From the NCBI GenBank assembly GCA_001179505.1, contig CDMY01000908.1:124001-188000 (forward strand): a stretch of 64,000 nucleotides of DNA. The letters are read 5' to 3'. Made by a program: the position numbers and the translations under genes. This document shows positions 2,970-32,096 of the stretch, piece by piece; position 1 is the stretch's first letter, and every line of letters starts with the position of its first letter. The stretch is from Vitrella brassicaformis CCMP3155 (taxonomy: Eukaryota > Protista > Chromerida). The notes under the pieces are model-generated. The model searched no databases and had not been told where the DNA came from. It saw only the letters and a program-made list of their open reading frames with translations.

Positions 2970-5900
2970 ATGAGTGAGGCGTCAGAGCCGACTCTGCCGA
3001 AGAGTGGCGCCATGGCTGAGGTGTGGCAGTTCGAGAAGACCGACAAGTGGCGGATGGACATCCAGAAGCTCTCCAAAAAGACCCAGCTCAAGAAGGCCAA
3101 GGCCCCGGACGAGGTGTCGTTCTCCTTCCCTCAGGTATGTAGGACAAGTGAGGACACAACAAAACCATGGTGTACTGTATTTCCGACATGATCCCTGGAT
3201 GCAGTTCTTCATCGACCTCATTGGGCACGTTCTTTTCTACCATCTCGCGTTGCTGTCGCTCCCTGTTCTATACTGGCTGTACGGGGGCCCAAAAGGAGGG
3301 TACTTTGCGATGAGGAATCGGCTGTTCCTCGGCTATGATGCCAACTCAATCAACCAGCTGCTGCAGGCGTCAGTGAGATCTACTTACGCCATACAGACAG
3401 ACAGACAGACCGACAAGTGCGGCTGTTGCAAGTACGTTGTGTGTGTGCCTCTGTGCCTGCAGGTCTCTGTACATGGTGGCTTTCTACATATAATTCCTCT
3501 ATTTCCCCCGATCTGTGTACTCTGTCGAAATGTTCTACATGATCGGAATCAACTTCCTGCGGTCCCTCATCGTCGCTGTCAAATACGGGTGGGTGAGTCG
3601 GCAGGCCAGAAAACGCCGCTCATGGCACACCGACAGCTATGTGTCTCTACCGTGCAGCTATGTGTCGCGTCGCAACTACCGCGCTCGTGGAGAGCGGCTT
3701 GTGGACCAAAACGAGTTCTTGAACGAGCTCATGATCAGAGGCTGGATCAATATCAAACCGCACAGTAAGCACGCCAAAGGGGCCATCCATCCATCCATCC
3801 ATTCATCCATCCATCACATCTCCTCACCTCGCAGTTGCCCAGCGAGAGGTGGAGGATTGTTCGGAGAGGCTGAAGGTCTGCAGAACGGCCCGACTGCGAT
3901 TTGCACTCACCGAGGACACCGAACAAGTAATCCACACACACGCCATCGACCTCCTCACATCTTTCGATAGATGGCAATGCGTGCAGTTCACGGCGTCCGC
4001 CCACTTCATGCGGCTGCTCGGCATCTCGGACACCAGCCAGTTTTACACTTATCGACAGCACCTACCCGGGACACAAACCGACTCGCAGCAACCGGCCAAG
4101 AAACACGCCAAGAGACCCAAGAAGAGAAAGCGCCGCGCCTCTTTCGACCTCACCAATGCCATCTCTGGCCGAAATCCGGCTGTTCCGATGCTGGACGTAC
4201 GTGAAGCGGAAGAGATCATTGAGGGCGATGTTCTCATGGAGGAGGGGAAACAGCAATGGACACTGCCAGTGTCCGGCTCGCCTCGCTCTGTCCGCCGGCG
4301 CATGTCTCTTGGGTCGCTGTACGATGAGGGCATTGTGATATGCGACGTGCCCGTCATCACCCTGGCCCATTACTTTGTGTCTCATGCGGTAAAGAAGGGT
4401 GTCTCGTCTGTGACGCTGTTGGAGCTGTTTCTGTTCTCGGCTGTCATTGTGAGCCTGCCTGCTGTGGCAAGGGTGGTCGACGGCTACCATCCATTCGGTG
4501 ACAATACGCTGGTACACACACATGCCCATGGACGGATGGATGGATGCATCAGTGGATGGCAGTGTGCGTCTTTGCGTGTACCAAGGCCCAGTTGGTGATT
4601 GGGTGTTACTTCATTCCCACGGCCCTCAACACGTTCTCCAACTACCTCTTCCTCATTTCTGCCTTCCTGTGAGCTGTTACACCCACGGCGTGCAAGACAG
4701 AATCCACACACACAGGGGCTCCATGGCACTCTGCGATCGACATTCGGACGTGCTGGATCGTGGCTTCAGTGACTTCTCTCGTCGGCGTCTGCTCATGAAC
4801 TGCTGCGGCGCATTGCTGACCAACGACCTTGACGACGAGGAGCGGGTGGCCATCGACACGGGAGACGACCCAATGATCGTCAAACTGCCCGTCCTCGACA
4901 TGGCGGACTTATCAACGATCAGGTATGTGGCCGTCTCTTTCCTTGCCTACTTTACCGAGTTTGTTTGTGCGAAGGCGTTTCTATGCATGTCTCTGAGACG
5001 GGGATGGTGCAGGACTTTCTTGTTGTTGCGGCGGCTGCTGATGGACTGGGGTCGGCGTTACCTCAAGCGGATTACCATGTTTGTGGGCTTTTTCTTCGCA
5101 ACCAACATTGCTCTCATCGGATGGTGAGACACACGCGAGAGACAGCGAACACACACCACACAGACACACAAACCAAAGCTCGCCGAAACAAGGGTCTCTT
5201 GTCTACATATCAGGTTCCTGTATGAGCTATACGCCTTACAAATCTTCCGGTAGGTACACTTCACGCCAACCAACCCGTCGATCGATCATGCATTCATCGA
5301 GATCCGCCTTTTTTAATCAGGCTTTCGACCGTCATCATAGCAGGTGGGCGGCTTGTTCGCCATGTGTCTCCTCCCCTTCTGCTCCTGCATGTTTGTGTGT
5401 GTGTGTGTGTACAGGCACCCACAATCTGCTGCTGTCTGTGTGTTTCGTGATACTGGTGATAAACGGCATGGCCATCAACAAGAGCGCCGAGCGACACGCA
5501 TACCTGCTCGTTAGACACCAGGTAGGTACCCTACACATGACATGCGCACATGTGCCTACAAAACACGAGCCTCCCCCGCCCCCCTCCCTGTCTGCTTTCA
5601 GGACCGTCTGTCGACGATGCTGCAGCTGCGGCTGGTGGAGGTTGCTGGGGACAGCATTCTGGCGCACACCGATCAGGTCGAAATCGTCCCTGTCTCTTGC
5701 TGCCCACACAACAAGGGCATGCACCCGCATCAACCGAGCGAGATCGTCAAGAACGAGACAGAGGAGGACGAGCAGGAGCAGAATGGGGCAGAAGAGGCGG
5801 ACGACCATATCACGATCCCAGTGCCATGTACGTCTCTTGTTATCATGTGTTGCTGCACTGTCTCCCTTTCTCCCCTTTGATGCAGATGATGTTCTCTCTC

Positions 5901-14679: not shown

Positions 14680-15488
14680 NNNNNNNNNNNNNNNNNNNNN
14701 NNNNNNNNNNNNNNNNNNNNNNNNNNNNNNNNNNNNNNNNNNNNNNNNNNNNNNNNNNNNNNNNNNNNNNNNNNNNNNNNNNNNNNNNNNNNNNNNNNNN
14801 NNNNNNNNNNNNNNNNNNNNNNNNNNNNNNNNNNNNNNNNNNNNNNNNNNNNNNNNNNNNNNNNNNNNNNNNNNNNNNNNNNNNNNNNNNNNNNNNNNNN
14901 NNNNNNNNNNNNNNNNNNNNNNNNNNNNNNNNNNNNNNNNNNNNNNNNNNNNNNNNNNNNNNNNNNNNNNNNNNNNNNNTGAGGCATAATCATGGGTGGA
15001 GGTTGAGGGTTGTGTTCACTAGCTCACCGGCATCCTTGGCGACAGCCGTGGCATTGCAGTGACCGGTGCGGCGGAGGATGCGGAGCGGACGGATCCCCCC
15101 GCGAGACTCAGTGCCGGCTGGCCGCACTGCCAGACGCTTCTTCAGGGAGAGCATCGCGCGGCTGGGGCTATGGCGATGTCGAGACGGCTTCAACGACCAG
15201 GGTGTGCAAGGGGTGTGGGTGTGCGGAAATGAAGAGGGGCAGGGGAGCTCTAGCCGAGAGAGTCAGCGAGATCTGGGAGCAATTAGATGCTGCACTGCTT
15301 GCAAAAAGCACCGAAACAACTTTGAGACGCAGGGGGCATGGCGCATGGCGGCCCCCACCTGCATTTACGGCCAACTTGAAGCCAGGAGGTCCCGGGTTTT
15401 AATTTCAATTGGTAGTTGAAGGCCTCAGTTCCATCCACACGTGTGTTGCTGTAGTCCAAGCTCAACGGTTTGCTGAGAGTGGAGCCCG

Positions 15489-16033
15489 ATGGCGACACTG
15501 AAGGTCCACGAGCTGACGATGAAGCAGGTGGCGTGCGTCTTTCAACATGATACCGACAAGAACATCCGCAGGCTGGCCACCAAGATGAGGCAGGTGGGTG
15601 GGCGGGCAAGTGGGTGGGACCAGGGGTGGGAGATCTGCACGTGAAGGCAGATCTTGACGTCCGTAGATGAAAGATGATCTTCAACGATTGGGGATCTGTA
15701 TGGATGAAGGACAGATCTGTTGTTTTCTCCCTGTATGTGTGTGTGTGCACTGAATCAGCACATGATGAACGGGGCGGCGTTGGCGCACATGGCCCGGATG
15801 CAGTACCACAACGCGCTGGAGGACATGGAGAGATACCTGGGCATCGAGGCCTACGGCGAGCGGCTGGCGCTGCTCTACTGGATACACCACACATACGAAG
15901 TATGTACGATGGATGGATGGATGGATTGGCAAAGATGCCCGTGCTCCCTCCCTTTGTGCAGGTGCGTGTGCCGGTTGGCGGCGGCCGTGGGCGTCGCCAG
16001 AAGCGGCGCGTCGTGCCGACCAAAGCCGCATAG
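15489..16033 (+). CDS. Small stand-alone SAM (sterile alpha motif) domain protein, about 105 aa
   Basis: Exons 15489-15593, 15759-15899 and 15962-16033 with phase-0 introns give MATLKVHELTMKQVACVF...HMMNGAALAHM...RYLGIEAYGERLALLYWIHH...RRQKRR...*. It matches the SAM pattern (G..L..L...LGI...G.R..LL..I) and has a basic tail. Confidence 0.7.
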
Positions 16034-16541
16034 CTCTACCACAACACACGACAAACATTGGTAGGTGTGGTTCGTGGGGGATGGCCTTTTGTCGTTGTGT
16101 GAGGCTGTGTGCATGATTCATTCAGGTCATCGGTTTGAGTCCTCTGGTAGCACGGTAGCATTGGCGGACGGGCATCGACACACGCACACGCACACACAAA
16201 TGGAGAGATGTAGATAGATGTAGAAAAGGAGGCCATGTGCGTCATGCAGTCTGTCTAAGATAGTCTTGCCTCGAGGGTCTTGTCTTGTGCAGATACACAC
16301 ATCCATACATCCGTCCATCGACCTGTCTATGCCGTGTGCCGTGCTATGCGTGTGTGAGATGCGAGTGTGCCTGCCCACATGTGACCTATCTACACGCGTG
16401 TATTCAGAGACTGTCGGTCCATCATGGAATAAGGGTCTCAGCGCCATTGCGTGTCTTCAAACTTGTGAGCATCCTCAAGAGGACACACACACGCACACAC
16501 ACACACACACGCACACACACGCACACGCACACGCGCACAGA

Positions 16542-19500
16542 ATCTGATGGACGTCTCACACACCATCTGTCTATCTGCTGAATATGCGGACAGACCACAT
16601 CGCACGAATGACGCGGACACAACGAACACAGAGGGCCGAGAACAGAGAGGCCTCACAGCTGGAGAAAAGCAATACGCACCCATACAGCCATCAGAGACCC
16701 CTCAATCAGTCTGACCTCACACTCACACCACGGTGAGCACCTCCATTTCATTGGCCATGAAGTACTCATTGCACCCAAACACAGCATTGTCATCCCAATT
16801 CCTCACCCCCACATAGCCCTCAGGCACCCCGGTGATGACCTGACGGCAGCTGCGCATATCAACATCCCGTGGCTGGAGCCATGGCTGGAGTTTGGCTTTG
16901 CGTTGGGCGATCACCCAACTGCCACCCTCACTGCCCAACTCTAGACACGGGATGAAACCCAGACTGATCCACAGCATCGGCCCATTCACTGACCCCTCCC
17001 GCCCGGCCACACACACAAACCCTTTCCCCCCCTCTATCTTGGTGGGCTTGTCGAAATGGCCGGCCAGTGAGAAATGCCACACATCACACTCGTATTTGGT
17101 CTTGCCTCTTGGGTCGTCGGGCACCCGGATTCCGGTACTGATGAAGGTGCCGAAGGCGTACTTGTCCTCGCGGATAACGAACACCAGGCCTCTCGCATGG
17201 CCCACACACCGCAGCAAATCGCCATACGACGGCCCGTCACGTGATGCGCTGAATGAAGAAGAACGCACACGCACACACGCACGCAGACACACACAGATAG
17301 GCACACGGAGTCAAACGATGGACGATGCCAATGACAAGAGCAGCGTACCTGTAGATGAGCTTCAGTCTGCCCGCAGTTGTCGGTCCGAGAAACCGATAGA
17401 GTGCCGCCGACTGGAGCGCATCAAAATTTGCACCCTCGATCACCTGCAATCAAAAATCAGAAGGCAGGATGATCAACACATCTATACTCTCTCTCGCTGA
17501 CGTGTGTGTGACCTTGAGTGAGAGCAGTGACCGGCCGCTGAGACGAATCACCTCCACTTCATCGGCCATGAAGAACTCACTGCCCCCAAACACAGCCCAG
17601 CCATACTCATTCCTCACCCCAACATAGCCATCAGGCACATGACTGCGGGGGATGCGATGACAGCAGCTGCGCATATTACCACTTCTGACGCCAAAATACA
17701 GTTCGTCGATCTCCAGCTTCGCCCCACCCACTGTCCCCTCCGGCCCGGCCACATGCACACCCCTGCCTCCCCCCATCCTGGTCGGTGTCTCGAAGTGGCC
17801 GGCCAGAGAGAATCTCCACACATCACACATGTAGGCGCTGCTGAAGCTTCTTGGGTCGTCTGGCAGCTGGATGCCGGCACTCGTATAGACGCCAAAAACG
17901 TACTTGTCCTTGCGGATGAGGAACACCAGGCCCTTCGTGTTGCCCACACAGCGCAGCAAATCGCCGTACCCTGCGCCGTCACGCGAAGCCCTAAGAACAT
18001 CAGAGACAGCGGAGAAAGACACATGATTGGTTGCAGTGTCTGTGATGTGGTTTGTGCGTCGCACCTGTACAGCAGAGTGAATTTACATTCGTCCCACATG
18101 CCGGGCGCCAAGGTGGAGTGGAGGGACGCACACTCAGTCGAACTCAGACCGCTGCCAACGACCACCTGCATACACAAAGGGGGAGGTGAGGGCAATTGTG
18201 ACGCTGCAATCACCCCATGGGCATTCTCACCTGGGGGTCGGGCGATTGATTGTCCTCGTCTGTCGTGCTGCGACTTGAGAGGGATGTGAAGATACCGAGG
18301 ATGTATGATGCCACGAGCGATAACCAAGACCTTCGCCTGGGCTCTGTCGTCCTGCGAGTCGAGAGGGCCGTGATGTCTTCCACCGCACCGTCAGACGCAC
18401 TGACGATGCCATCATCATCCTGATAAAGCACAACGGAGATTTACAAGAAGCGAGTCGCCGCCTTGTTGTCTGCGTCAGTCTCACCTCTGGTATGTCACTC
18501 AGTCGATCGTCGGCAGTAACAGTGACTGCCGACTTGACTGACGAACGAGACCACACCTGCACACACAAAATCACAATGCCTCCCCCCCTGTGTGGGTGTC
18601 CATTTCTCGGCGCCTCAGTGACCACAGACGGCAGCCCCTGTCGGTGGCTGCGTGTGTCGCTCCTGTGGATCTTGTTTGGCGGCCTCTCGTTGGTCAGGCG
18701 ACTCTCTGACGGAACAATCTGCATGGCAACGCAGATAGCCAGAACAGATTGTCACACACAGAGATGGATGACCGGTCTTGGTTTGCGTACGCTCATGGTA
18801 TTTGGCCCCGAGTGCTGTGATCGCTGGTCGAGCGGCCGATTGCCGGCAGCAGGATCGTCGTCTGGTGGACAGGTGGTGGTCTGCAGCTCACACGGCAGAC
18901 ACACAAAGGCCTCACTTTCCGCCGTAGTGTCAGTACGGCGAGTGTATTACCTGTCGGCTGAGGTCGATGGTCGATCCGATGAGCTGATGTGCCACTCGAA
19001 TGTCATCACCAGCCCGGATGTCTAGATATGAGCTGATGTGCCCCGACAGAGTGAGAGGCCGGGCTGGGGGATGCGGGTGGGGCGGATGTATTGGGGAAGC
19101 CGACACCGACGCCTCTTCTCGGGCCTGAAACGAAAACAGATGGAGGGCGTCGTGAGTGTTTGTTTTGTCTCTCTTGGCTTGCTCACACTCATGGTATTTC
19201 GCCTCGAGTACTGCGATTGCCGGTGCAGCGGTCGATGAGCGTCAGCCCTCGGCCGCTGATGACTCACCCTATCGTTAGGACGACGGCCGATGAATCCATC
19301 CGCCATTCGCACCGCAGCCGCCTCGTCAACCACTTGGCCCTGCAAGACATCACAGGAGAAACATACGTGAACGAACAAGGGATTCACATCAAATAAGGGA
19401 TACCAGGCGGTCGTTTGGTTGCATTGTCGTCGGCCGATAGGCGCCACCAGGAAATGCCCTCTCAAGCCCGCCACACTCGTTTTTGGTACTGTCATGGCAG

Positions 19501-20520
19501 CTGCCTCGCTCTCTACCACGGTCGCCCTGCAGTTCAAAGATAAACCAGTACTCAGAGAGAAGAAAAAATCCATTCACGTAGCTGCGCTCTGCGTACCTTT
19601 CTACTGCTGTCTGCTGGGTGTTCTACGGCAGTAGCAGCGAAGGTTTGTGCTGGCACCGATTGCTCTCCTCCAAGGCTCTGACACGACACAGCATGGGGCG
19701 CCTTGGTTCTGTGAGCGCTGTCTTTTTTGCGTCTTACGCGGATGTCATCTGATGCTACAACCCCGGGCAAACAGCGGGGCCGATTGGGAGGAGGACGGGA
19801 GGGGTCAAGTAGCCAGAAATCCTGAAGACCAACACACCGTGAACATACGCAACATTACACTCTTTGTCTGTTCCACCTGTGGGCATCGGTTCTTGAATGC
19901 GGCAATCCAGGTATCGCTGGCCGAAAAACCACGGACGCCCACTCGATTGGCGATCTCCGTTGACTTACTCTTGATGGCAGTGTGAAGAATAATCCTCGGC
20001 TGCGGATAGCCTGTAATCCATTGCTGCAGCTCCGTCTCAAGCTGCTGCGTAGCCAGAGGTGACGGTGGAGCGGGCTGAGAAGACAGGTCCGGTGTCGCCG
20101 ACTGGTAAGAGAGGGGAATGGGTAGGGGATGGGGGTACGGTGGATGCATCGGGGGGGCGGGTCGCCCGGCGGCTGCAGCAGCAGAGATGTGCAGCTCCGG
20201 CTGGTGGATAAGTGGAAGGGGAAGGGGATAGGGATAAAGTTGGTGGATCGGGGGATGAGAAGACGCCGCCGCCGCAGCCGACACAGATTGCCCTCCTTCC
20301 CGGCTCTGCAACGGCACAAAAGATGTGGTTAGAACATAAGATGAAGAGTGTGACGTGTCGATTGCTTGTCACGTGATTAGTCAGCTGCAACGCGGCTTGA
20401 GTGCCATCCGATGTGTCGTATCCGGGCAAAGCGTGGATCCCTTCTTGCGGGAAGGCGTCGAAGTGTTGGTCGCGCGTCATGCCGTCAGTGTCAATCGGGG
20501 GAGGTGAGAGGGTAGTTACG

Positions 20521-20551
<31 letters not shown>

Positions 20552-22302
20552 GAGGCTGATCGGCCGAAGTAAAACCCTGGACAGGCAAAGGCGATAGACG
20601 TGCGGTCGACCCCTTCCTACCTTCATTCCATCGGTGTCGTTATTGCCTGCTGCTGCTGCAGCGGCAGGTGTGTCAGAGGACGGAAAAGGATTCTGAAAAA
20701 GCAGGCATGGAGATCAATGAAGAGTGAACCTCCCACTATCCCCTATCTGTGTGCTCCTTTCCCACCTGCTTGTATCGTCTCCTGAAGTTCTTGATCCAGT
20801 TGTCGCTCGCCAAGAACCCAGTGACGCCCAATCGACTGGCAATCTCAATCGCCTTGGTCCTGATATTCCCTGTGGGAAGGCTCGTTGGGTCATCATGGGT
20901 GGCCATCCACTGCCGCATCTCGTCCTCAATTGGCTGATACTTGGGCTGTCTGTTGCGCTTCTTGGTGTGGTCGGCGGTCTGCACGCCGGCCTCCCTCTGC
21001 TTCTTGATGGCATAGTACCACTGCTTGAAGCGCCCAGGGGGGATGCCCTTCTCCCTCTCGAACTGAGGCATCGAGATGGACTCTCCGCTGCTCTTTCGCC
21101 TCTCGAACTCATCCACCAGCTGCAGCCGCTCGCCGATCGTCACCTCGCCCGCATTCTTTGTGCACACCTGAACTCAAGTGAACACACAGACAGAAAAGAC
21201 GGACATTTGGGTGTGTTTGTGAGTGGGTGCAGTCATTTCACCTGTGAGTTCGATTGACGGCATGATGTGGGCAGAGTTGGTGGGAGTGAACTTGTGCGAT
21301 GACGTGAGGCTGGAGATCCTTCGGCAACTGGCTGGCCCATAGCCATCAATGGATGACTGAAAAGCGACTGCTGTTCGGGGATACCTTTGATCCACTCCTG
21401 GAAGACAGCATCGAACTCTTGATCGCCCATCGACTACGCGAAAAACCATACCACGCTCATGTTCCCCTACCGTCATTCCATCGGTGTCGTTACTGCCTGC
21501 TGCTGCTGCTGCTGCAGCGGCAGGTGGGTCAGAGGACGGAAAAGGATTCTGCAAAAGCAGACATGAATCCACGAAGGACGATCTTGTCACTGCGGGCACT
21601 CTGTCTGTCCACCTGCATATCGTTGATATTGTCAGCAAGGGATAGAGGCGGTGACGCAGATGGTCCAGGAGGATTCTGAAGAGACAGTGACGCATCGACT
21701 ATGCCACAAGAATCATTGCACCGTACCTGTGGCTCGTTGCCATCTTGGGGTGCTTCCTGGAGCGCCGTCGCCCCGTCACCCTGAACAAGCAAAGCACAAG
21801 GAGATGACAAGCAAACGTGCGAAAGAGTGATGTGTGGTGAGAAAACACATCACCTGTGTGAGGGGGTTGCCAAGCTCGTCCATCATTTGCCTCTTCTCGC
21901 GGGAAGCGATGAGATGCGATCGGGAAAGACGCAGATGAGCTTGCACGAGAAAGGTGGCGGGCGGAGTGTTCTGTTGGATGCCTCTCTGTGGGTGCTGTCT
22001 TGTCTGCAGGTCCTCTCGTGGGATTACAAGGCAAGATCTCCCCAAACTGCGTGTTCTGGAAGCTTCTTACGCACTTCTTTGACTGCGTGGCTGGCACTGG
22101 TGGCTCGAGGAGCCGAATGAAGGCGACAGAAAGCAACACTGGAGAAAAAGGTCAGAAGAAGATCCTCCTGGCAGTTTGTGTGTCAGTGATCGATCGTGGC
22201 ATACTTACATGGGGCTCACCTTCTGCGTTGCGGATCGACGGCGTAGGAGAACGGCTCCCGCAATCCCGGCTGACAAATCCTCTTGATCGTCTTGACGTCG
22301 CT
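16542..22302. repeat. Segmental duplication, left copy (partner 26121-30615)
   Basis: Colinear similarity from atctgatggacgtctcacacaccatctgt to cttgacgtcgct, covering the 3' flank, the whole HTH-TLDc gene and its upstream region. Confidence 0.9.
16723..21886 (-). CDS. CENP-B/pogo-type DNA-binding domain (HTH + HTH_Tnp_Tc5), a second Tc5 HTH and tandem TLDc domains; paralog A
   Basis: A continuous in-phase exon chain can be traced from MMDELGNPLTQ (ATG 21886). It runs through TIGERLQLVDEFERRK...KYQPIEDEMRQWM...IRTKAIEIASRLGVTGFLASDNWIKNFRRRY and LETELQQWI...IANRVGVRGFSASDTWIAAFKNR to LLYRASRDGAGYGDLLRCVG...FMADEVEVI and LIYSASRDG...FMANEMEVLTVV*. Confidence 0.75.
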
Positions 22303-22320
22303 GCCCAGCGTGTTTTCAAC

Positions 22321-25337
<3,017 letters not shown>

Positions 25338-26120
25338 TGAAGACGTGTGTGACTTTGTCGCATGCATTTTTCTCTGCATTGATACTCATGTGGTGTTCTG
25401 CATGTAGCGAGGAGCAATTCAGACACAAACACACTCTTCGACCTTTCCTCTCACTGAACGGCTAGACGAGGTGAGAGAGGAAGTTAGACCCTTTTTTCTC
25501 TCTCATTTCCTCGCGGCCCTTCGCACCCGCTGGAAGTTTTATAGATAGGGAGAGCTTTTTTCGGGCGTACGCCGACGATTTTGAGATTGAGTGTATTCAC
25601 ACACAGTCTGAGTCAGTGTGTAGGGTGTGACTCTGCCCGTCCGTGCATGCTGTCTGTTTTGTACACCGCTGTGGGAGGGAGAGGAGTGATGTGGCAAACG
25701 ACAATCAGATGCGATGACGGTAGGATGACGGTTGAACAGACACATTATATCAGTCAACATCCAGACAATACGCACACACAACTACATGTACACGTACACA
25801 AAACTTCATTTGGCTCTCATCTGAGACGTCTCACACACCATCAAAACAACACACGCCCAAGGGGCCAGGAAAACAGAGACCTCGCGCACCACACTGGATG
25901 AAAGCAACACACACCACACGAGTGGCTGTGTCCATATCACCTGTGATGGACAATATCTGCGTCGTCACTCACGAGTGACTGTCCACACAGTGGCATGACG
26001 ATTATTGTTTCGATGAGTGAGTGACTTGTGTGTCCTTAAAACGCCCAAGAATGAAGAGGCCACATCGGATGACGCAGACACCCACCCACACACACGTACA
26101 CAGGACTTCATTTGCCGCTC

Positions 26121-29100
26121 ATCTGATGGACGTCTCACACACCATCTGTCTGTCTGCTGAATGTGGGGACACACCACATCGCACAAGTCATACACGGACA
26201 GACAAACACGGAGGGCCGGAAAAGGAGGGGCCTCACACACAGCCCACTGGATCAAGGCAGTATGAAGACATATAACCAGCCGTCAAAGCGTGTCACGTGG
26301 TTGGTAAATCACATGCAGAACCCAATCCGACCTCTCCCTCACTCTCACACACAGTCAGCACCTCCACTTCATCGGCCATGAATTCCTCACTGCCCCCAAA
26401 CAGAGCCCGGCCACGCTCATGCCTCACCCCCTCATAGCCATCAGGCAGATCATAGTGGGGGATGAATTGACTGCAGCTGCGCATATCATCAGCAGCGCCA
26501 CCCTCACAGCCCAACCGGGCGGGAGTGCCATATCCCAAACTCAGCCACCAACCGATGTTCAGCTTTGAACCATTATCTACTTGTCCCTCACGCCCGGCCA
26601 CACCCACATCCCTGCTGCCCTCCTCCAGCTTGGTCGGTCCCTTGGCGAAGTGGCCAGCCAGCGAGAAATCCCACCCATCACACGAGTAGAAGTGTCCGCC
26701 TTTGTAGTCAAGTGGCACTTGGATGTGGTCACTGATGAAGGCGCCAAAAACATACTTGCCCTTGCGGATAACGAACACCAGACCACTCGCATCGCTCACA
26801 CAACGCAGGAGATCGCCATATGACGACCCATCACGTGAGGCTCTGAATGAAGAAGAACACACACACACACACGCACATCCGCAGACACACACAGACAGGC
26901 ACACAGAGTCAAACGATGGACGATGCCGATGACAAGAGCACGGTACCTGTAGATGAGTTTCAGTCTGCTCACAGTTGTCAGTCCGAGGAATCGATAGAGT
27001 GCCGCCGACTGCAGGGCATCGAGAGTCGCACCCTCGATCACCTGCAACGACCAACAACAGGACGTCGATGCGGCTCTTTCTCGCTAATGTGTGTATGACC
27101 TTGAGTGAGAGCAGTGACCGGCCATCAACACGAATGACTTCCACCTCATCAGCCATGAGTTCCCTACTGCCCCCAAACAGAGCATCGCCATCCTCATCCC
27201 TCACCCCCTCATAGCCATCAGGCACAGAACGGCTGGGGATGAAATGACAGAAGCTGTGCATATCAGCAGCAGCGCCACCCTCACAGCCCAACCACAGGCT
27301 TAGGGGGGGCCCATTGATGAACAGCTTCGCCGGCCTAGCGTCACCCTTATAGCCCAACATCAGGCCCCCAATCCGCAGCTTCGCCCCGTCCGCTGTAAGC
27401 CCCTCCAATCCCGCCACATACATCATGTACCCGCGGAGCTTCATATATATCGTTGGTTGGTTTTGGTTGAAGTGGCCGGCCAATTCGAATTGCGACACAT
27501 TACACCCGTAGGAGTTCACGCCTCTTGGGTCATCGGGCAGCTCGATGCCGGCACTGATAAAGGCGCCAAAGACGTACTTGTCCTTGCGGATGAGAAACAC
27601 CAGGCCCTTCGTGTCGCCCACACAGCGCAGAAGATCGCCGTACTCTGCGCCGTCACGCGAAGCCCTAAGAACATCAGAGACAACAGAGAATGACACATGA
27701 TTGATTGCAGTGTCTGTGATGTGGTTTGTGTGTCGCACCTGTAAAGCAGAGTGAATTCACATTCGTCCAACATGGCGAGCGCCAAAACGGAGCGGAGGGC
27801 CGCACATTCAGTCGAACTCAGACTGCTGCCAACGACCACCTGCATACATAAAGAGTGATGTGAGGGCAATTGTGACGCTGCAATCACCCCATGGGGACTC
27901 TCACCTGTGGGTCGGGCGATTGGTTGTCCCCGTCTGTCGTGCTGCGACTTGAGAGAGCCGTGATGCCATCCGGCACACCGTCAGACCCACTGACGATGCC
28001 ATCACCATCCTGATGAAGGTACGCAGCGGAGATATACAAGAAGCGAGTCGCCTCAGTCTGACCTCTGGTATGTCACTGAGGCGATCATCGGCTGCAGTCG
28101 TTGACACGGACTTGACTGACGAACGGGAGCACACCTGCCTCACAAATCTGCCTTCCTGCTGCGTGGTTGTCCCATTTAGTTGTGTTTGACTGACCATAGA
28201 CGGCGGACGATTTCGGTGCCTGCGTGTGGCAGTCTTTTGGATTTTGTTCGGCGACCTCTCGTTGGTCAGTTGACTCTCAGACGGCGCCATCTGAATGATA
28301 ACAAGCTGTCACACAGGCAGATGGATAAGTGGTCTTGGTTTGCTGACGCTCATGGTGTTCCTCTCTGATGGCTGCGACTGCTGGTCGAAAGGTCGGTGGC
28401 TGGTAGCAGCAGCATCGTCGTCTGGTGTGCTGGTGGTGTCCTGCAATCAAAACGGCAGACACACAGAGGCGTCAGCCGCTGCCGTAGTTTCAGCCGAGTG
28501 TCTTTACCTCTCGGCTGCGGTCGGTGCTCGCTCCGAAACAAATGTCAGCCCTAGCAGCAGCAGCAGCAGCAGCGGCATCAATTGAGTGTGCTGCCGACTG
28601 GTGGGCGAGGGGCCTGGGTGGGGGATGTGGGTGAGGCGGATGAAGTGGGGAAGCGGGCTGGGCAGCTGCCGCTGCTGCCTCCCGCTCAGGCGCCTCTTCT
28701 CCGGTCTGAAAGAAGCACCAGATAGAGAGTGCTGAGCGTCTAGATTGCCTCTTGCCTGAGGTCCTCCGGGCATTGTGTTAATCCACTCTTGGACGGCCGC
28801 ATGTAACTCCTGCTCGCTCATCAACTGCACATAAAGAGAATCGAGGCCCTCCGGAATGCAGGCTTTTCCCTTCCTACCGTCATTCCATCGGTGCCGTCAG
28901 TGCCTGCTGCAGTTGCAGCTGCAGCGGCAGAAGGCTCAGAGGGCGGAGAAGGATTCTGAAAAAGCAGGCATGGAGATTAATGAAGAGTGAACCTCGCACT
29001 GCATTTGTCAGCTTTCCATGACCTGCCGGCATCGCTCTCTGAAGGAATTGATCCAGCTGTCGCTCGCCGAGAAGTCACCAATGCCCAGCTGGATGGCGAT

Positions 29101-30615
29101 CTCCATCGCCTTGGTCCTGATGTCCTTTGGGGGGACCTTTGTTGGGTCCTCATGGCTGGCCATCCACTGCCGCATCTCGACCTCAATCTGGGGATACTTG
29201 GGCGGTCTGATGCGCTTCTTGGTGTGGTCGGCGGTCTGCACGCCTGCCTCCCTCTGTTTCTTGATGGCATAATACCACTGCTTGAAGCGGTCGGGGGGGA
29301 TGCCCTTCTCCCTCTCGAACTGAGGCATCGAGATGCGCTCTCCGCTGTCCTTCCGCCTCTCGAACTCGTCGACGAGCTGCAGCCGCTCGCCGATCGTCAC
29401 CTCGCCCGCATTCTTTGTGCACACCTGAACTCAGGTGAACACACAGACAGAAAAGACGGACATTTGGGGTGTTTTTCAGTGGGTGCAGTCATTTCACCTG
29501 TGAGTTCGATTGACGGGTCAGAGATGGTGGGAGTGAACTTGTGCGATGACGTGAGGCTGGAGATCCTTCGGCAACTGGCCGGCCCATAGCCATCAATGGA
29601 TGACTGAAAGGCGACTGCTGGTCGAGCGGTCGGTCAGGTTCGGGCATACTATTGATCCACTCCTGGAAGACAGCATCGAACTCTTGATCGCCCATCGACT
29701 ACGCGAAAAACCATACCACGCTCATGCACTCTCGTCTTCCCTTACCGTCATTCCATCGGTGTCGTTACTGCCTGCTGCTGCTGCTGCAGCGGCAGGTGGG
29801 TCAGAGGACGGAAAAGGATTCTGCAAAAGCAGACATGAATCCACGAAGGACGATCTTGTCACTGCGGGCACTCTGTCTGTCCACCTGCATATCGTTGATA
29901 TTGTCAGCAAGGGATAGAGGCGGTGACGCAGATGGCCCAGGAGGACTCTGAAAAGATAGTGAGGCATCGTCTATGCCACAAGAATCATTGCACCGTACCT
30001 GTCCTTCGTCGCCATCGCGGTGTGCTTCTTCGGGCGCCCTCGCCCCGTCGCCCTGAACAAGCAAAGCACAAGGAGATGGCAAGCAAACGTGCGAAAGAGT
30101 GATGTGTGGCGAGAAAACACATCACCTGTTTATGGTGGTCGCCAAGCTCGTCCATCATTTGCCTCTTCTCGCGGGAAGCGATAAGATGCGATCGGGAAAA
30201 GAAACAGATGAGCTTGCAGAAGGATGGCGGGGGGCGGAACGTTCTTGTTGGATACCTCTCTGTGGCTGCTGTCTTGTCTGCAGGCCTTCTCGTGGGAGTA
30301 CAAGGTCTCCCCAGCCTGCGTGCTCTGGAAGCTTCTACGCACTACTTTGACTGAGTGGCTGGCACTGGTGGCTCGAGGAGCCGAATGAAGACGACAGAAA
30401 GCAACACTGGAGAGAAAGGTCAGAAGAGGATCCTCTTGGCAGTTTGTGTGCCAGTGATCGATCGTGGCATACTTACATGGTGCTCACCTTCTGCATTGCG
30501 GATCGACGGCGTAGAGAACGGCTCCTTATCCATCCGGCTTGAATTCCTGTCCGGAATAGGATTGCGCACCAACCCCGCTTCACGACTGAATCCTCTCGAT
30601 CGCCTTGACGTCGCT
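26121..30615. repeat. Segmental duplication, right copy (partner 16542-22302); lacks the second Tc5-HTH block
   Basis: Same colinear similarity, but shorter because the segment equivalent to about 19150-20560 is absent. Confidence 0.9.
26293..30158 (-). CDS. CENP-B/pogo-type DNA-binding domain plus tandem TLDc domains; paralog B
   Basis: MMDELGDHHKQ (ATG 30158); TIGERLQLVDEFERRK...KYPQIEVEMRQWM...DFSASDSWINSFRERC; two TLDc domains (YRASRDGAEYGDLLRCVG...LMADEVEVI and ASRDGSSYGDLL...FMADEVEVL). Continuity needs one GC-AG intron at 28706-28755. Confidence 0.72.
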
Positions 30616-30650
30616 TTGCCTCCCTCTCTGATCCCTTGGTGGGGGATTAC

Positions 30651-32096
30651 ATGAACTTTTTGGGTGTCCTCACTGCATTCACTGGTGCCGCCCGAGCTGT
30701 GAGGGGCCTCCTGAAAGACGACGACAGCCCTCGCGGTGATCACCCTGCTGCAATGCCGAGGATGCCGAGCCTACAACAACGACTCAAGTCGAGTCGCTGC
30801 ACGAATGCTCAGCTGAGGTCGGATCTTCAGTCCAAGGACCAGCAGCTCCAGCAAAGCCAAGCCGCACAGCAGGGGCTGGAGCAGCAACTGCATTCCACCC
30901 GGCTGCAAGGCCAGAACCAGCTGATGGACCTCATGCTCAAGCACCAGAACCAGATGAATGACCTCAACCGCAGCCACAACGAGGACCTGAGACAGCAGTT
31001 GAGCAAGAAGCAGGAGGCCGAACTTGCCGAGCGCACTCGTGTCCACGAGGAGGAGCTGCGGCTGTTCAGGGAGAAGGCCGAAGCTGAGAAGAAAGCGGCG
31101 GAGGCGGCGGCAGCGAAGGCGGCGCTCAAGGAGGACCGAGAGAAGACACGGAAGCTCCTCGAGGAGTACCCACCTCCTCAACACATGAAGGACGCCATCA
31201 AGTCCTACCCCAACGCACAATTCATCGGCGTCAACGGCGTCAACGGCACAGCCAAGACCACCACCGTCAACACGATCTTGGGGAAGGCGGTGGCGCCTGT
31301 GAGTTCCAACGGTGAGGGCAACACAGTCAGCAACTATCACGAGTGCCCGGCCGGCCACCCGTTGCACCCAGCCGTGTTCATCGACCATCCAGGTAGTGAG
31401 ACGCAGAAGGGACACCCGCCTGGACATCTCACTACGTGTGTGTGTGTGTGTATGTGTGTTGGCCATCAGGCGGCTGCAGCGACGAGTATAACGAGCGGGA
31501 GTACGGCAGGAAGACCGGATCGCGGTATGGGGATGGCCAGATCATCACCATGAGCGACCGCCCTCGCTCCCTCGACAACAAGGTACCAGGAGCACCTGTA
31601 CTGTGCGTGTGTGCGCTCGTCTAACGTTGATGTGCGCGTGTGTATGTCTTGTCAGCTCCGTGCTGAGGCAGCCCGCCACAACATTCCAGTGTTCTTCGTG
31701 AGGACGAAGATGGACATCACTGTCAATGCCATGGCCCGCGACACGATCCCCAAGACCCCCAAGGCCGCATTCGAGGAGGTGCGCAAGTACTACCGCGAGA
31801 TGGGCCTCCCGCCCAACCGCACCTACCTGATCTCGGGATGGTACACCCAAGACATCCAGGACAAGACGGACTTCCGCGTGGCAGACTTCTACCGCCTCAT
31901 GGATGACCTCAAGGAGGCCCTCGACAACAACGTCTCTGCCGATGCCCGAAGGTCAGAAACACGCCCCTCCCCCACCCCCACCAGCACCACTGCTGCACAC
32001 ATGTCGTTGTGCTGGTGCAGGAGGCTCAGGGAGTCGGAGTCTGCGGCCTCTTCTTCGTCCTCGGCGTCCTCGGCGTCTTCTTCGTCGTCTTCCTGA
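30651..32096 (+). CDS. IRG/IIGP-like (immunity-related p47 GTPase-like) protein with an N-terminal amphipathic helix and coiled coil
   Basis: G1 GVNGTAKTT (31236-31262), G2-like GEGNT, G3 FIDHPG, G4 FFVRTKMD, G5-like YLISG and DFYRLMDDLKEAL. The spacing and the RTKxD motif fit the IRG family. A long Gln/Glu/Lys coiled coil lies upstream. Confidence 0.7.

What the first reader, a model, noticed from the sequence alone, without database searches (positions are those of the whole stretch)
16723..21886. Unusual fusion: pogo/CENP-B transposase DNA-binding domain joined to tandem TLDc domains, with no DDE domain
Seen: I traced an unbroken in-phase exon chain from the CENP-B-type HTH pair (about 20763-21168) through a second Tc5 HTH (about 19878-20050) and linkers into two TLDc domains (about 17515-18175 and 16723-17440). 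The paralog at 26293-30158 keeps the same architecture with open frames. Established: HTH + HTH_Tnp_Tc5 is the TIR-binding N-terminus of pogo/Tigger transposases and of domesticated CENP-B/Jerky proteins. TLDc domains (OXR1/NCOA7/Rtc5) bind V-ATPase and are linked to oxidative-stress resistance. I know of no described protein combining the two. Inference: a domesticated transposon DNA-binding module recruited as a sequence-specific regulator with a TLDc sensor/effector, retained in two copies.
Basis: partly seen in the sequence, partly recalled or inferred. Interest (0 to 1): 0.78.

Follow-up and report, generated by a model that had tools for sequence, protein, structure and literature searches.

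The report
Transposase DNA-binding head fused to TLDc pair
The alga Vitrella brassicaformis has a real 21-exon gene, one of at least 13 like it, that joins the DNA-binding head of a pogo/CENP-B-type jumping gene (without its cutting domain) to two TLDc domains. The combination is in public protein databases but I found no paper on it, and its function is untested.

Summary
The exon chain at 16723-21886 (minus strand) is exactly the public Vitrella brassicaformis gene model CEM36858.1 / A0A0G4GZZ2: 1191 aa, 21 GT-AG exons.

- **Domains.** It carries a complete bipartite CENP-B-type DNA-binding domain, matched to PDB 1HLV by sequence and fold. It also has a second half-HTH, a long disordered linker and two TLDc domains whose fold matches OXR2, NCOA7 and mEAK7. 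There is no DDE domain and there are no terminal inverted repeats.
- **Family.** This is not a two-copy oddity. At least 13 Vitrella genes share the order HTH, linker, TLDc, TLDc.
- **One transcript.** For one paralog, an independent transcriptome ORF carries the HTH and both TLDc domains with the annotated splice junctions.
- **Other partners.** The same roughly 400-nt phase-0/0 HTH exon also sits in front of alpha-kinase, PARP, RING/SH3, AP2 and OHA genes.
- **Selection.** The HTH is under purifying selection (omega about 0.4; 0.15 for its first half between the two window copies).
- **Distribution.** Close relatives were found only in Vitrella. Five literature searches and three papers checked gave no paper describing the fusion.

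The scan had already found this family on other DNA of this genome (s1-235882, s1-242836).

I read it as a host-transposase fusion family that tethers a fast-changing TLDc pair to DNA. DNA binding, nuclear location and the TLDc role are inferred. There is no cDNA for this locus itself.

The parts
16723..21886 (-). Gene A: 21-exon coding region of the HTH-(HTH)-TLDc-TLDc protein (public model CEM36858.1 / A0A0G4GZZ2, 1191 aa)
   Evidence: Exact exon-by-exon mapping of P0001. All introns are GT-AG. Exons 1-17 are phase 0/0.
20766..21167 (-). Exon 5: complete bipartite CENP-B-type DNA-binding domain (two three-helix HTH motifs), a single 402-nt phase-0/0 exon
   Evidence: Pfam HTH_Tnp_Tc5, 1.1e-7. 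1HLV residues 9-129 at E=1.5e-5. AlphaFold model shows six helices with pLDDT above 90. Foldseek match to 1HLV_A, probability 1.00. Net charge +9.
19877..20305 (-). Exon 8: proline-rich stretch plus a second, Tc5-type half-HTH (19877-20050). Among the aligned family members it is present only in this gene.
   Evidence: Pfam E=3.6e-4, 20.9 bits, under the cut-off. 43% identical to the second half of exon 5. Absent from copy B. Low model confidence.
21471..21548 (-). Exon 4 (NPFPSS...polyAla...TDGMT), duplicated as exon 6 at 20621-20692. This marks an internal duplication of the block made of this small exon plus an HTH.
   Evidence: Direct sequence reading. 89% nucleotide identity between the two.
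18231..19339 (-). Exons 12-17: family-conserved, disordered Ser/Thr-, Pro- and Asp-rich linker
   Evidence: Conserved in HTH-bearing and HTH-less family members alike. pLDDT under 50. Pooled omega 0.5 for exons 14-17, residues 644-793.
17513..18165 (-). Exons 18-19: TLDc domain 1, split by a phase-2 intron after the LLY(R) motif
   Evidence: Pfam TLD. Model pLDDT about 85. Foldseek matches to 4ACJ, 7OBP and 7UNE.
16723..17443 (-). Exons 20-21: TLDc domain 2 and the stop codon, with the same phase-2 intron position as domain 1
26293..30158 (-). Gene B: tandem paralog with HTH exon 29023-29424, TLDc-1 27100-27839 and TLDc-2 26293-27041. It has no second HTH and one GC donor near 28765.
   Evidence: A/B alignment with conserved acceptors and donors. 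Middle exons read by eye. A 481-aa ORF spans both TLDc domains. No matching public protein was found.

Best explanation
Gene A, and its neighbour B, belong to a Vitrella-specific family of host-transposase fusion genes.

**Origin (inferred from anatomy).** The complete bipartite DNA-binding domain of a pogo/CENP-B-type transposase was domesticated without its DDE nuclease. It became a self-contained exon of about 400 nt in phase 0/0. Exon shuffling then placed it in front of several host cassettes. The most frequent cassette is a conserved disordered linker followed by two TLDc domains.

**Likely working (inferred, not shown).** The basic HTH pair binds a specific DNA sequence in the nucleus. 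This tethers the TLDc pair to chromatin. The TLDc pair, whose body changes fastest between copies, acts as a protein-binding, sensing or effector module. That role would be analogous to the KRAB, BTB or F-box partners of other transposase-derived DNA binders.

**Evolution.** The family grows by tandem duplication. Paralogs exchange short sequence tracts.

**Shown:** gene structure, domain identities by sequence and fold, absence of DDE and terminal inverted repeats, family size, one-transcript status in a paralog, and purifying selection.

**Inferred:** DNA binding, nuclear location, what the TLDc pair binds, and the biological output.
For: - **Gene model.** It is identical to public protein P0001, with canonical splice sites.
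- **HTH identity.** The HTH matches the CENP-B DNA-binding domain by sequence and by fold. Its net charge is +9.
- **TLDc identity.** The fold matches OXR2, NCOA7, mEAK7, TBC1D24 and Oxr1.
- **Recurrence.** The order HTH, linker, TLDc, TLDc holds at L001-L005, L007, L008 and L010, plus L009 with a single TLDc match, L015 and both window copies. Twelve annotated proteins carry it.
- **Transcript support in a paralog.** The transcriptome ORF P0014 (Transcript_34816, 711 aa, marked complete) carries the HTH and two TLDc domains. It maps 100% onto 12 exons of one locus, with the annotated junctions.
- **Shuffled exon.** The HTH exon has the same CAG|gtggga end in the SH3 and OHA fusions. The HTH is also found with alpha-kinase, PARP, RING and AP2.
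- **Domestication.** There are 28 HTH exons but one DDE_1 in 72.7 Mb. No terminal inverted repeats flank the genes.
- **Selection.** HTH ORFs are intact in 14 paralogs. Median omega is 0.37 and never exceeds 0.71 over the whole exon. Pooled omega is 0.4-0.5 for HTH, linker and TLDc.
Against: - No cDNA or transcript-derived protein was found for gene A or B themselves. The model is an Augustus prediction made with RNA-seq intron hints.
- Exons 9-11 of gene A have no counterpart in any paralog and could be mispredicted. Because they are phase 0/0, this would not break the fusion.
- Nothing here tests DNA binding or localisation.
- All characterised TLDc proteins act on the V-ATPase or in oxidative stress outside the DNA-binding context, so the output of a DNA-tethered TLDc has no precedent.
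- The linker-TLDc-TLDc cassette also exists without any HTH (P0084, P0086, P0087, P0088, P0089). The cassette therefore does not depend on DNA tethering.
- Between A and B, omega in the TLDc bodies is 0.66-0.88. This fits relaxed constraint as well as diversification.
Confidence: 0.6

Rival explanations
1. Annotation artefact. An HTH gene and a downstream TLDc gene are separate transcription units, merged by the gene predictor and by the first reader.
For: - There is no transcript evidence for this locus.
- Exons 9-11 are unique to gene A.
- TLDc cassettes with other N-termini exist.
- Short HTH-only models exist: P0007, P0013, P0018, P0019, P0021.
Against: - A paralog's independent transcript ORF spans the HTH and both TLDc domains with the annotated junctions.
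- The same order and strand holds at 10 or more loci, with conserved phase-compatible linker exons.
- The spliced A reading frame has no stop between the domains.
Confidence: 0.07
2. Genome-defence or heterochromatin adaptor. As with the fission-yeast CENP-B homologues Abp1 and Cbh1/2, which bind retrotransposon DNA and recruit silencing factors, the HTH family recognises repeated or foreign DNA. It delivers varied effectors there (TLDc, PARP, RING, kinase). The rapid turnover of the family would reflect an arms race.
For: - The HTH is shuffled onto enzymatic effectors typical of signalling or conflict systems.
- The family is lineage-specific and tandemly expanded.
- The recognition half of the HTH and the TLDc bodies diverge fastest between A and B.
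- Local windows with omega of 1 or more occur at matching places of both TLDc domains.
- Established knowledge of Abp1/Cbh supports the analogy (PMC4981269, PMC5391189 by title and abstract).
Against: - No target repeat has been identified.
- The genome has almost no pogo elements left to police: one DDE_1.
- Windowed omega values are noisy and mosaic gene conversion confounds them.
- One HTH gene carries AP2 domains, which looks like an ordinary transcription factor.
Confidence: 0.15
3. The HTH does not bind DNA here. The proteins would be cytoplasmic TLDc factors, for example V-ATPase partners like OXR1, NCOA7 or mEAK7. The ex-transposase fold would serve as a protein- or RNA-binding adaptor.
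For: - The TLDc fold is closest to V-ATPase-bound TLDc structures (7UNE, 7UZG, 7U4T, 7FDE).
- The cassette also works without an HTH.
- No DNA target is known.
Against: - Both HTH motifs are intact, basic (+9) and conserved at the positions shared with CENP-B, such as (F/L/K)-A-S-D-x-W (FSASDxW in most copies) and KKRxRxPKY.
- One family member pairs the HTH with three AP2 DNA-binding domains.
Confidence: 0.13
4. Decaying remnants. The copies are pseudogenes or transposon debris with no function.
For: - Copy B has a GC donor and no public protein.
- TLDc omega between A and B is near 0.7-0.9.
Against: - Reading frames are open across 21 exons in A and across all traced exons in B.
- The HTH exon is intact in 14 paralogs with omega about 0.37.
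- Paralogs are expressed.
- There are no terminal inverted repeats.
Confidence: 0.05

Closest known systems
CENP-B (human) and fission-yeast Abp1, Cbh1, Cbh2; vertebrate TIGD, JRK, POGK and POGZ (domesticated pogo transposases)
   Same: All use the same bipartite N-terminal DNA-binding domain. The gene A exon aligns to CENP-B residues 9-129 and to Abp1. All derive from a pogo-type transposase kept by the host.
   Different: Those proteins keep the DDE-derived core, and CENP-B also keeps a dimerisation domain. Here only the DNA-binding exon survives. It is joined to TLDc domains, multiplied to about 28 copies, and confined to one alga.
Host-transposase fusion genes made by 'transposase capture' (bioRxiv 10.1101/2020.05.07.082677), and the Caenorhabditis family of F-box genes with a mariner HTH (PMC12062965)
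   Same: A transposase DNA-binding domain supplies an exon that is spliced to host domains. The captured domain sits at the N-terminus. A multicopy host domain captures it and the fusion then expands in one lineage.
   Different: The partner is TLDc, which the held text of those papers does not list. The host is a chromerid alga, not an animal. The same HTH exon is reused with at least seven different partners.
TLDc proteins OXR1, NCOA7, mEAK7 (TLDC1), TBC1D24 and yeast Oxr1/Rtc5
   Same: The TLDc fold is shared. Foldseek gives target-normalised TM-scores of 0.66-0.70 to 4ACJ, 8AR6, 7UZG and 7OBP. The sequence motif LLYRASRDG is also present.
   Different: Known members have one TLDc with LysM/GRAM, TBC or EF-hand partners and act on the V-ATPase. 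Here two tandem, fast-diverging TLDc domains follow a DNA-binding head. V-ATPase binding is untested.
Other Vitrella TLDc expansions noted by this scan (BTB-BTB-TLDc-TLDc, secreted TLDc, DRE-TIM-TLDc)
   Same: They share the same expanded TLDc pair with variable body segments, arrangement in tandem arrays, and sequence exchange between copies.
   Different: The N-terminal module here is a DNA-binding HTH, not BTB or a signal peptide. I did not test those notes beyond the TLDc count and the local divergence pattern.

Membership tests
CENP-B/pogo-type bipartite HTH DNA-binding domain | C-terminal HTH of Tc5/CENPB type (Pfam PF03221) above the curated cut-off | tested here: met
   32.1 bits on the exon and 43.7 bits on the protein, against a cut-off of 22.2.
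CENP-B/pogo-type bipartite HTH DNA-binding domain | Preceding psq/CENP-B_N-type HTH, so that the two motifs form one domain | tested here: met
   Pfam CENP-B_N gave no hit. However, the exon aligns to 1HLV residues 9-129, which cover both motifs. The model has 2 x 3 helices at pLDDT above 90. Foldseek matches 1HLV_A with probability 1.00 over 134 columns.
CENP-B/pogo-type bipartite HTH DNA-binding domain | Sequence-specific DNA binding | not testable with these tools
   Only indirect support: net charge +9 and conserved basic inter-motif stretch KKRxRxPKY.
pogo/Tigger transposon (active or relic element) | DDE_1 catalytic domain after the HTH | tested here: not met
   No DDE in P0001 or in any family member. 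The genome has one DDE_1, on another contig.
pogo/Tigger transposon (active or relic element) | Terminal inverted repeats flanking the unit | tested here: not met
   Only low-complexity inverted matches were found in 15000-31500.
TLDc domain family (PF07534) | Profile match above the curated cut-off | tested here: met
   The whole protein scores 57.4 bits against 24.5, with two stretches. Single exons alone score 21.9 and 23.2 bits, just under the cut-off.
TLDc domain family (PF07534) | TLDc fold | tested here: met
   Foldseek matches 4ACJ, 7OBP, 8AR6, 7UZG_T, 6R82 and 7FDE_P with probability 1.00. Target-normalised TM-scores reach 0.70.
TLDc domain family (PF07534) | Binding to the V-ATPase V1 sector (known function of OXR1, NCOA7, mEAK7, Oxr1p) | not testable with these tools
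   No sequence motif defines the interface. It needs a pull-down or co-structure.
Host-transposase fusion gene | Transposase domain and host domain on one mature transcript | tested here: inconclusive
   Met for a paralog: the transcriptome ORF P0014 is collinear with L015. For gene A there is only the Augustus model with RNA-seq hints. No transcript ORF was found.
Host-transposase fusion gene | Purifying selection on the captured domain | tested here: met
   Median omega is 0.37 over 14 paralogs. A versus B gives 0.15 for codons 1-70 and 0.59 for codons 71-134. Pooled values are 0.42-0.50.

The most novel reading that the evidence does not exclude
Vitrella has built a combinatorial, lineage-specific system. 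A diversifying transposase-derived DNA-binding head addresses a repertoire of effectors to particular DNA sequences. The effectors are the hypervariable TLDc pairs above all, but also PARP, RING, alpha-kinase and AP2. This would be either a new class of ligand- or stress-sensing transcription factors, or a nuclear surveillance system against foreign or repeated DNA. In either case TLDc would act as a variable recognition domain, not as a V-ATPase regulator.
Probability: 0.15. Interest if true: 0.75.

Novelty: new variant of a known kind. Interest (0 to 1): 0.5.

Why it matters
Capture of a transposase DNA-binding domain by host genes is a known route to new regulators in animals. This would be a clear case in an alveolate alga, the free-living sister group of the apicomplexan parasites.

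The partner, TLDc, has an unsettled biochemical role. Tethering it to DNA would be a new context for it.

The family offers natural experiments: the same HTH exon sits on seven or more effector types, and TLDc cassettes exist with and without the HTH. These could help to find out what TLDc domains bind.

The interest is tempered in three ways. The proteins are already in public databases, the scan had already found the family elsewhere in this genome, and nothing functional is known.

Tried and rejected
I could not see the called genes around the locus or the annotation status of copy B.
- **The protein-atlas search** gave no usable hit.
- **Transcript ORFs for A or B.** The two word searches and mapping of the transcript-like hits found none.
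- **Transposon reading** is rejected: there is no DDE, no terminal inverted repeats, and 12-21 conserved introns.
- **Recent donor for gene A's divergent TLDc exons** is rejected: the best match in the genome is 79% identical.
- **'Introns are constrained family-wide'** is rejected. Across seven paralogs, 6 of 7 introns are less conserved than every exon compared; intron 19 (76.5%) falls within the exon range. The near-identical introns are specific to certain pairs, so patchy gene conversion is the simpler reading.
- **Number of HTH gains and losses.** The tree of the linker plus TLDc region is star-like. Well-supported branches force only one change, so I make no claim.
- **TLDc in distant HTH relatives.** None of the 57 remote HTH relatives (P0025-P0081) has a TLDc.
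- **Joined model of copy B.** B was analysed exon by exon, by reference. The joined model of gene A was used only as the public protein P0001 that a tool returned.

Full report
**Organism and locus.** The window is contig C908:124001-188000 of a 72.7-Mb, 1064-contig genome. Every close protein match is named Vitrella brassicaformis CCMP3155, as earlier agents of the scan had said. The DNA is about 56% G+C with short GT-AG introns.

**Observation.** Searching the 143-aa ORF that contains the HTH exon against 1.84 billion representative proteins returned P0001. [quoted passage not shown]
- P0001 maps without a mismatch onto 21 exons, from the ATG at 21886 to the stop at 16723.
- All introns are GT-AG.
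- Exons 1-17 are whole numbers of codons (phase 0/0).
- Each TLDc domain is two exons split by a phase-2 intron at the same place, after LLY(R/S). The pair of exons starts and ends in phase 0 (and sequence reading).

**Domain identity.**
- Exon 5 (20766-21167) scores above the Pfam cut-off for HTH_Tnp_Tc5.
- Over its whole length it aligns with residues 9-129 of the CENP-B DNA-binding domain (1HLV, E=1.5e-5) and more weakly with fission-yeast Abp1.
- An AlphaFold2 model was built from an 18-member family alignment. It gives six helices at pLDDT above 90 for residues 85-212 and about 85 for both TLDc domains. The linker is disordered.
- Foldseek matches the model to the TLDc structures of mEAK7, OXR2, NCOA7, TBC1D24 and yeast Oxr1, and to CENP-B bound to its DNA box, all at probability 1.00.
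- The HTH pair has net charge +9. The N-terminus is acidic, at -11.
- The second HTH (end of exon 8) is a half-domain just under the Pfam cut-off. It arose with a duplicated small exon: exon 6 is 89% identical to exon 4. Among the aligned family members it is confined to this gene.

**Not a transposon.** The genome has at least 28 Tc5-HTH exons but only one DDE_1 exon, on contig C458. That exon has only a 26-residue weak HTH-like match upstream. No terminal inverted repeats flank either gene.

**A gene family, not a pair.**
- tblastn with the exons of gene A finds the order HTH, linker, TLDc, TLDc on one strand at L001-L005, L007, L008 and L010, with L009 showing only one TLDc match, and at both window copies. 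It is also at L015.
- Twelve public Vitrella proteins carry both domains: P0001, P0002, P0004, P0006, P0009, P0011, P0015, P0020, P0082, P0083, P0085 (weak HTH) and P0090. With copy B that makes at least 13 genes. Contig C268 alone holds a large array.
- The linker exons are conserved across the family, including in members that have another N-terminus and no HTH: P0084, P0086, P0087, P0088, P0089.
- The closest relative of gene A's TLDc cassette, at 79% nucleotide identity, is such an HTH-less gene on C201.
- The same HTH also heads genes with alpha-kinase, SH3, RING plus SH3, OHA, three AP2 domains, and PARP.
- In the TLDc, SH3 and OHA fusions for which I hold the locus, the HTH lies in an exon that is a whole number of codons (about 400 nt in most, 492-690 nt in three where the exon starts further upstream) and ends CAG|gt (CAG|gtggga in eight of the twelve). 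This is the anatomy expected of a shuffled exon.

**One transcript?**
- The genome paper used Augustus with strand-specific RNA-seq intron hints. It does not mention TLD, CENP or HTH.
- For the paralog on C260, an independent transcriptome ORF (P0014, Transcript_34816, 711 aa, 'complete') carries the HTH and both TLDc domains. It maps 100% onto 12 exons with the junctions of the annotated model P0082.
- For genes A and B I found no transcript-derived protein.
- Exons 9-11 of gene A have no counterpart elsewhere and are the weakest part of the model. Being phase 0/0, they do not affect the fusion.

**Copy B.** It aligns with gene A over exons 1-6 and 14-21, with conserved acceptors and donors. 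I read its two middle exons by eye. They are in frame, and one intron has a GC donor. B lacks the roughly 1.5-kb block with the second HTH. No public protein corresponding to B turned up.

**Selection and exchange.**
- The HTH exon is open in 14 paralogs. Median pairwise omega is 0.37 and the maximum is 0.71 over the whole exon.
- Pooled over 11 genes, omega is 0.4-0.5 for HTH, linker and TLDc.
- Between A and B, the first HTH motif is nearly invariant (omega 0.15). The second motif gives 0.59 and the TLDc bodies give 0.66-0.88.
- Several introns are 92-100% identical between A and B while the exons they flank are 75-86% identical. No closer donor exists in the genome.
- Across seven paralogs, most introns are less conserved than the exons; only intron 19 falls within the exon range. 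The near-identical introns are pair-specific.
- I read this as patchy gene conversion plus faster change in the TLDc bodies and the second HTH motif, not as constrained introns.
- Twelve-codon windows with omega of 1 or more fall at matching places of both TLDc domains. They are noisy and need proper site tests.
- A tree of the linker plus TLDc part is too star-like to count HTH gains and losses.

**Distribution and literature.**
- All 24 close HTH relatives for which a source is named, and all TLDc-cassette relatives, are from Vitrella.
- The next HTH relatives are at most 28% identical in all but one case (Pasteuria, 38% over a short stretch). They are bivalve and metagenomic pogo/CENP-B-like proteins and one Pasteuria protein, and none has a TLDc.
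- No paper in the library holds TLDc together with Vitrella or with CENP-B.
- A 2026 TLDc review mentions no DNA-binding partner.
- A 2025 screen of transposon-domain captures does not list TLDc in its held text.
- The scan itself had already reported this family on other DNA of the genome (s1-235882, s1-242836). It had also reported other TLDc expansions with hypervariable segments. My results agree with these notes.

**Interpretation.** This is a new variant of a known kind, a host-transposase fusion family. I commit to a nuclear, sequence-specific DNA-binding head that tethers a variable TLDc pair to chromatin, at about 0.6 overall. The architecture itself I put at about 0.9. The rivals are a genome-defence flavour of the same idea, a non-DNA role for the HTH, an annotation merger, and decay.

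Noticed in passing
window 16723-21886 versus 26293-30158: The two tandem copies are similar in a mosaic pattern. Introns 1-4, 17, 18 and 20 are 92-100% identical, while the neighbouring exons 2, 5 (second half), 19 and 21 are 75-86% identical. Four-fold sites differ by 20%, intron cores by 11% on average (range 0-42%).
   Followed up: partly
window about 28765 (copy B, minus strand): The exon encoding LMSEQELHAAVQEWINTMPGGPQ ends in CAG|GCAAGA, a GC donor instead of GT. In the paralog model P0004 the matching stretch looks like an intron read through in frame.
   Followed up: no
window 22471-22752 (+): The first exon of a CTP synthase (CTP_synth_N, 1e-10) lies on the opposite strand between the two HTH-TLDc genes.
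   Followed up: partly
L013 (G000:C458) 4113-4667 (-): This is the only DDE_1 (pogo-type transposase core) exon found in the 72.7-Mb genome. It has only a 26-residue weak HTH-like match just upstream, and the adjacent ORFs have no Pfam match.
   Followed up: partly
L014 (G000:C201:50000-59999) (-): This gene (annotated P0089; transcript-like P0086, 875 aa) has the TLDc cassette closest to gene A's (79% nucleotide identity). Its N-terminus is different and has no HTH or Pfam match. It shows the head of these genes being swapped.
   Followed up: partly
P0003/P0091/P0092, P0005, P0012, P0016, P0022 (other contigs): The same Vitrella HTH clade is fused to PARP, alpha-kinase, RING plus SH3, OHA plus DUF7602, and three AP2 domains. 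The PARP fusion is supported by a transcriptome ORF of 909 aa.
   Followed up: partly
window 16250-16620, 26000-26260 and elsewhere: Long (CA)n/(TG)n-like microsatellite tracts lie just downstream of both genes and recur across the window. They give many spurious low-complexity matches.
   Followed up: no
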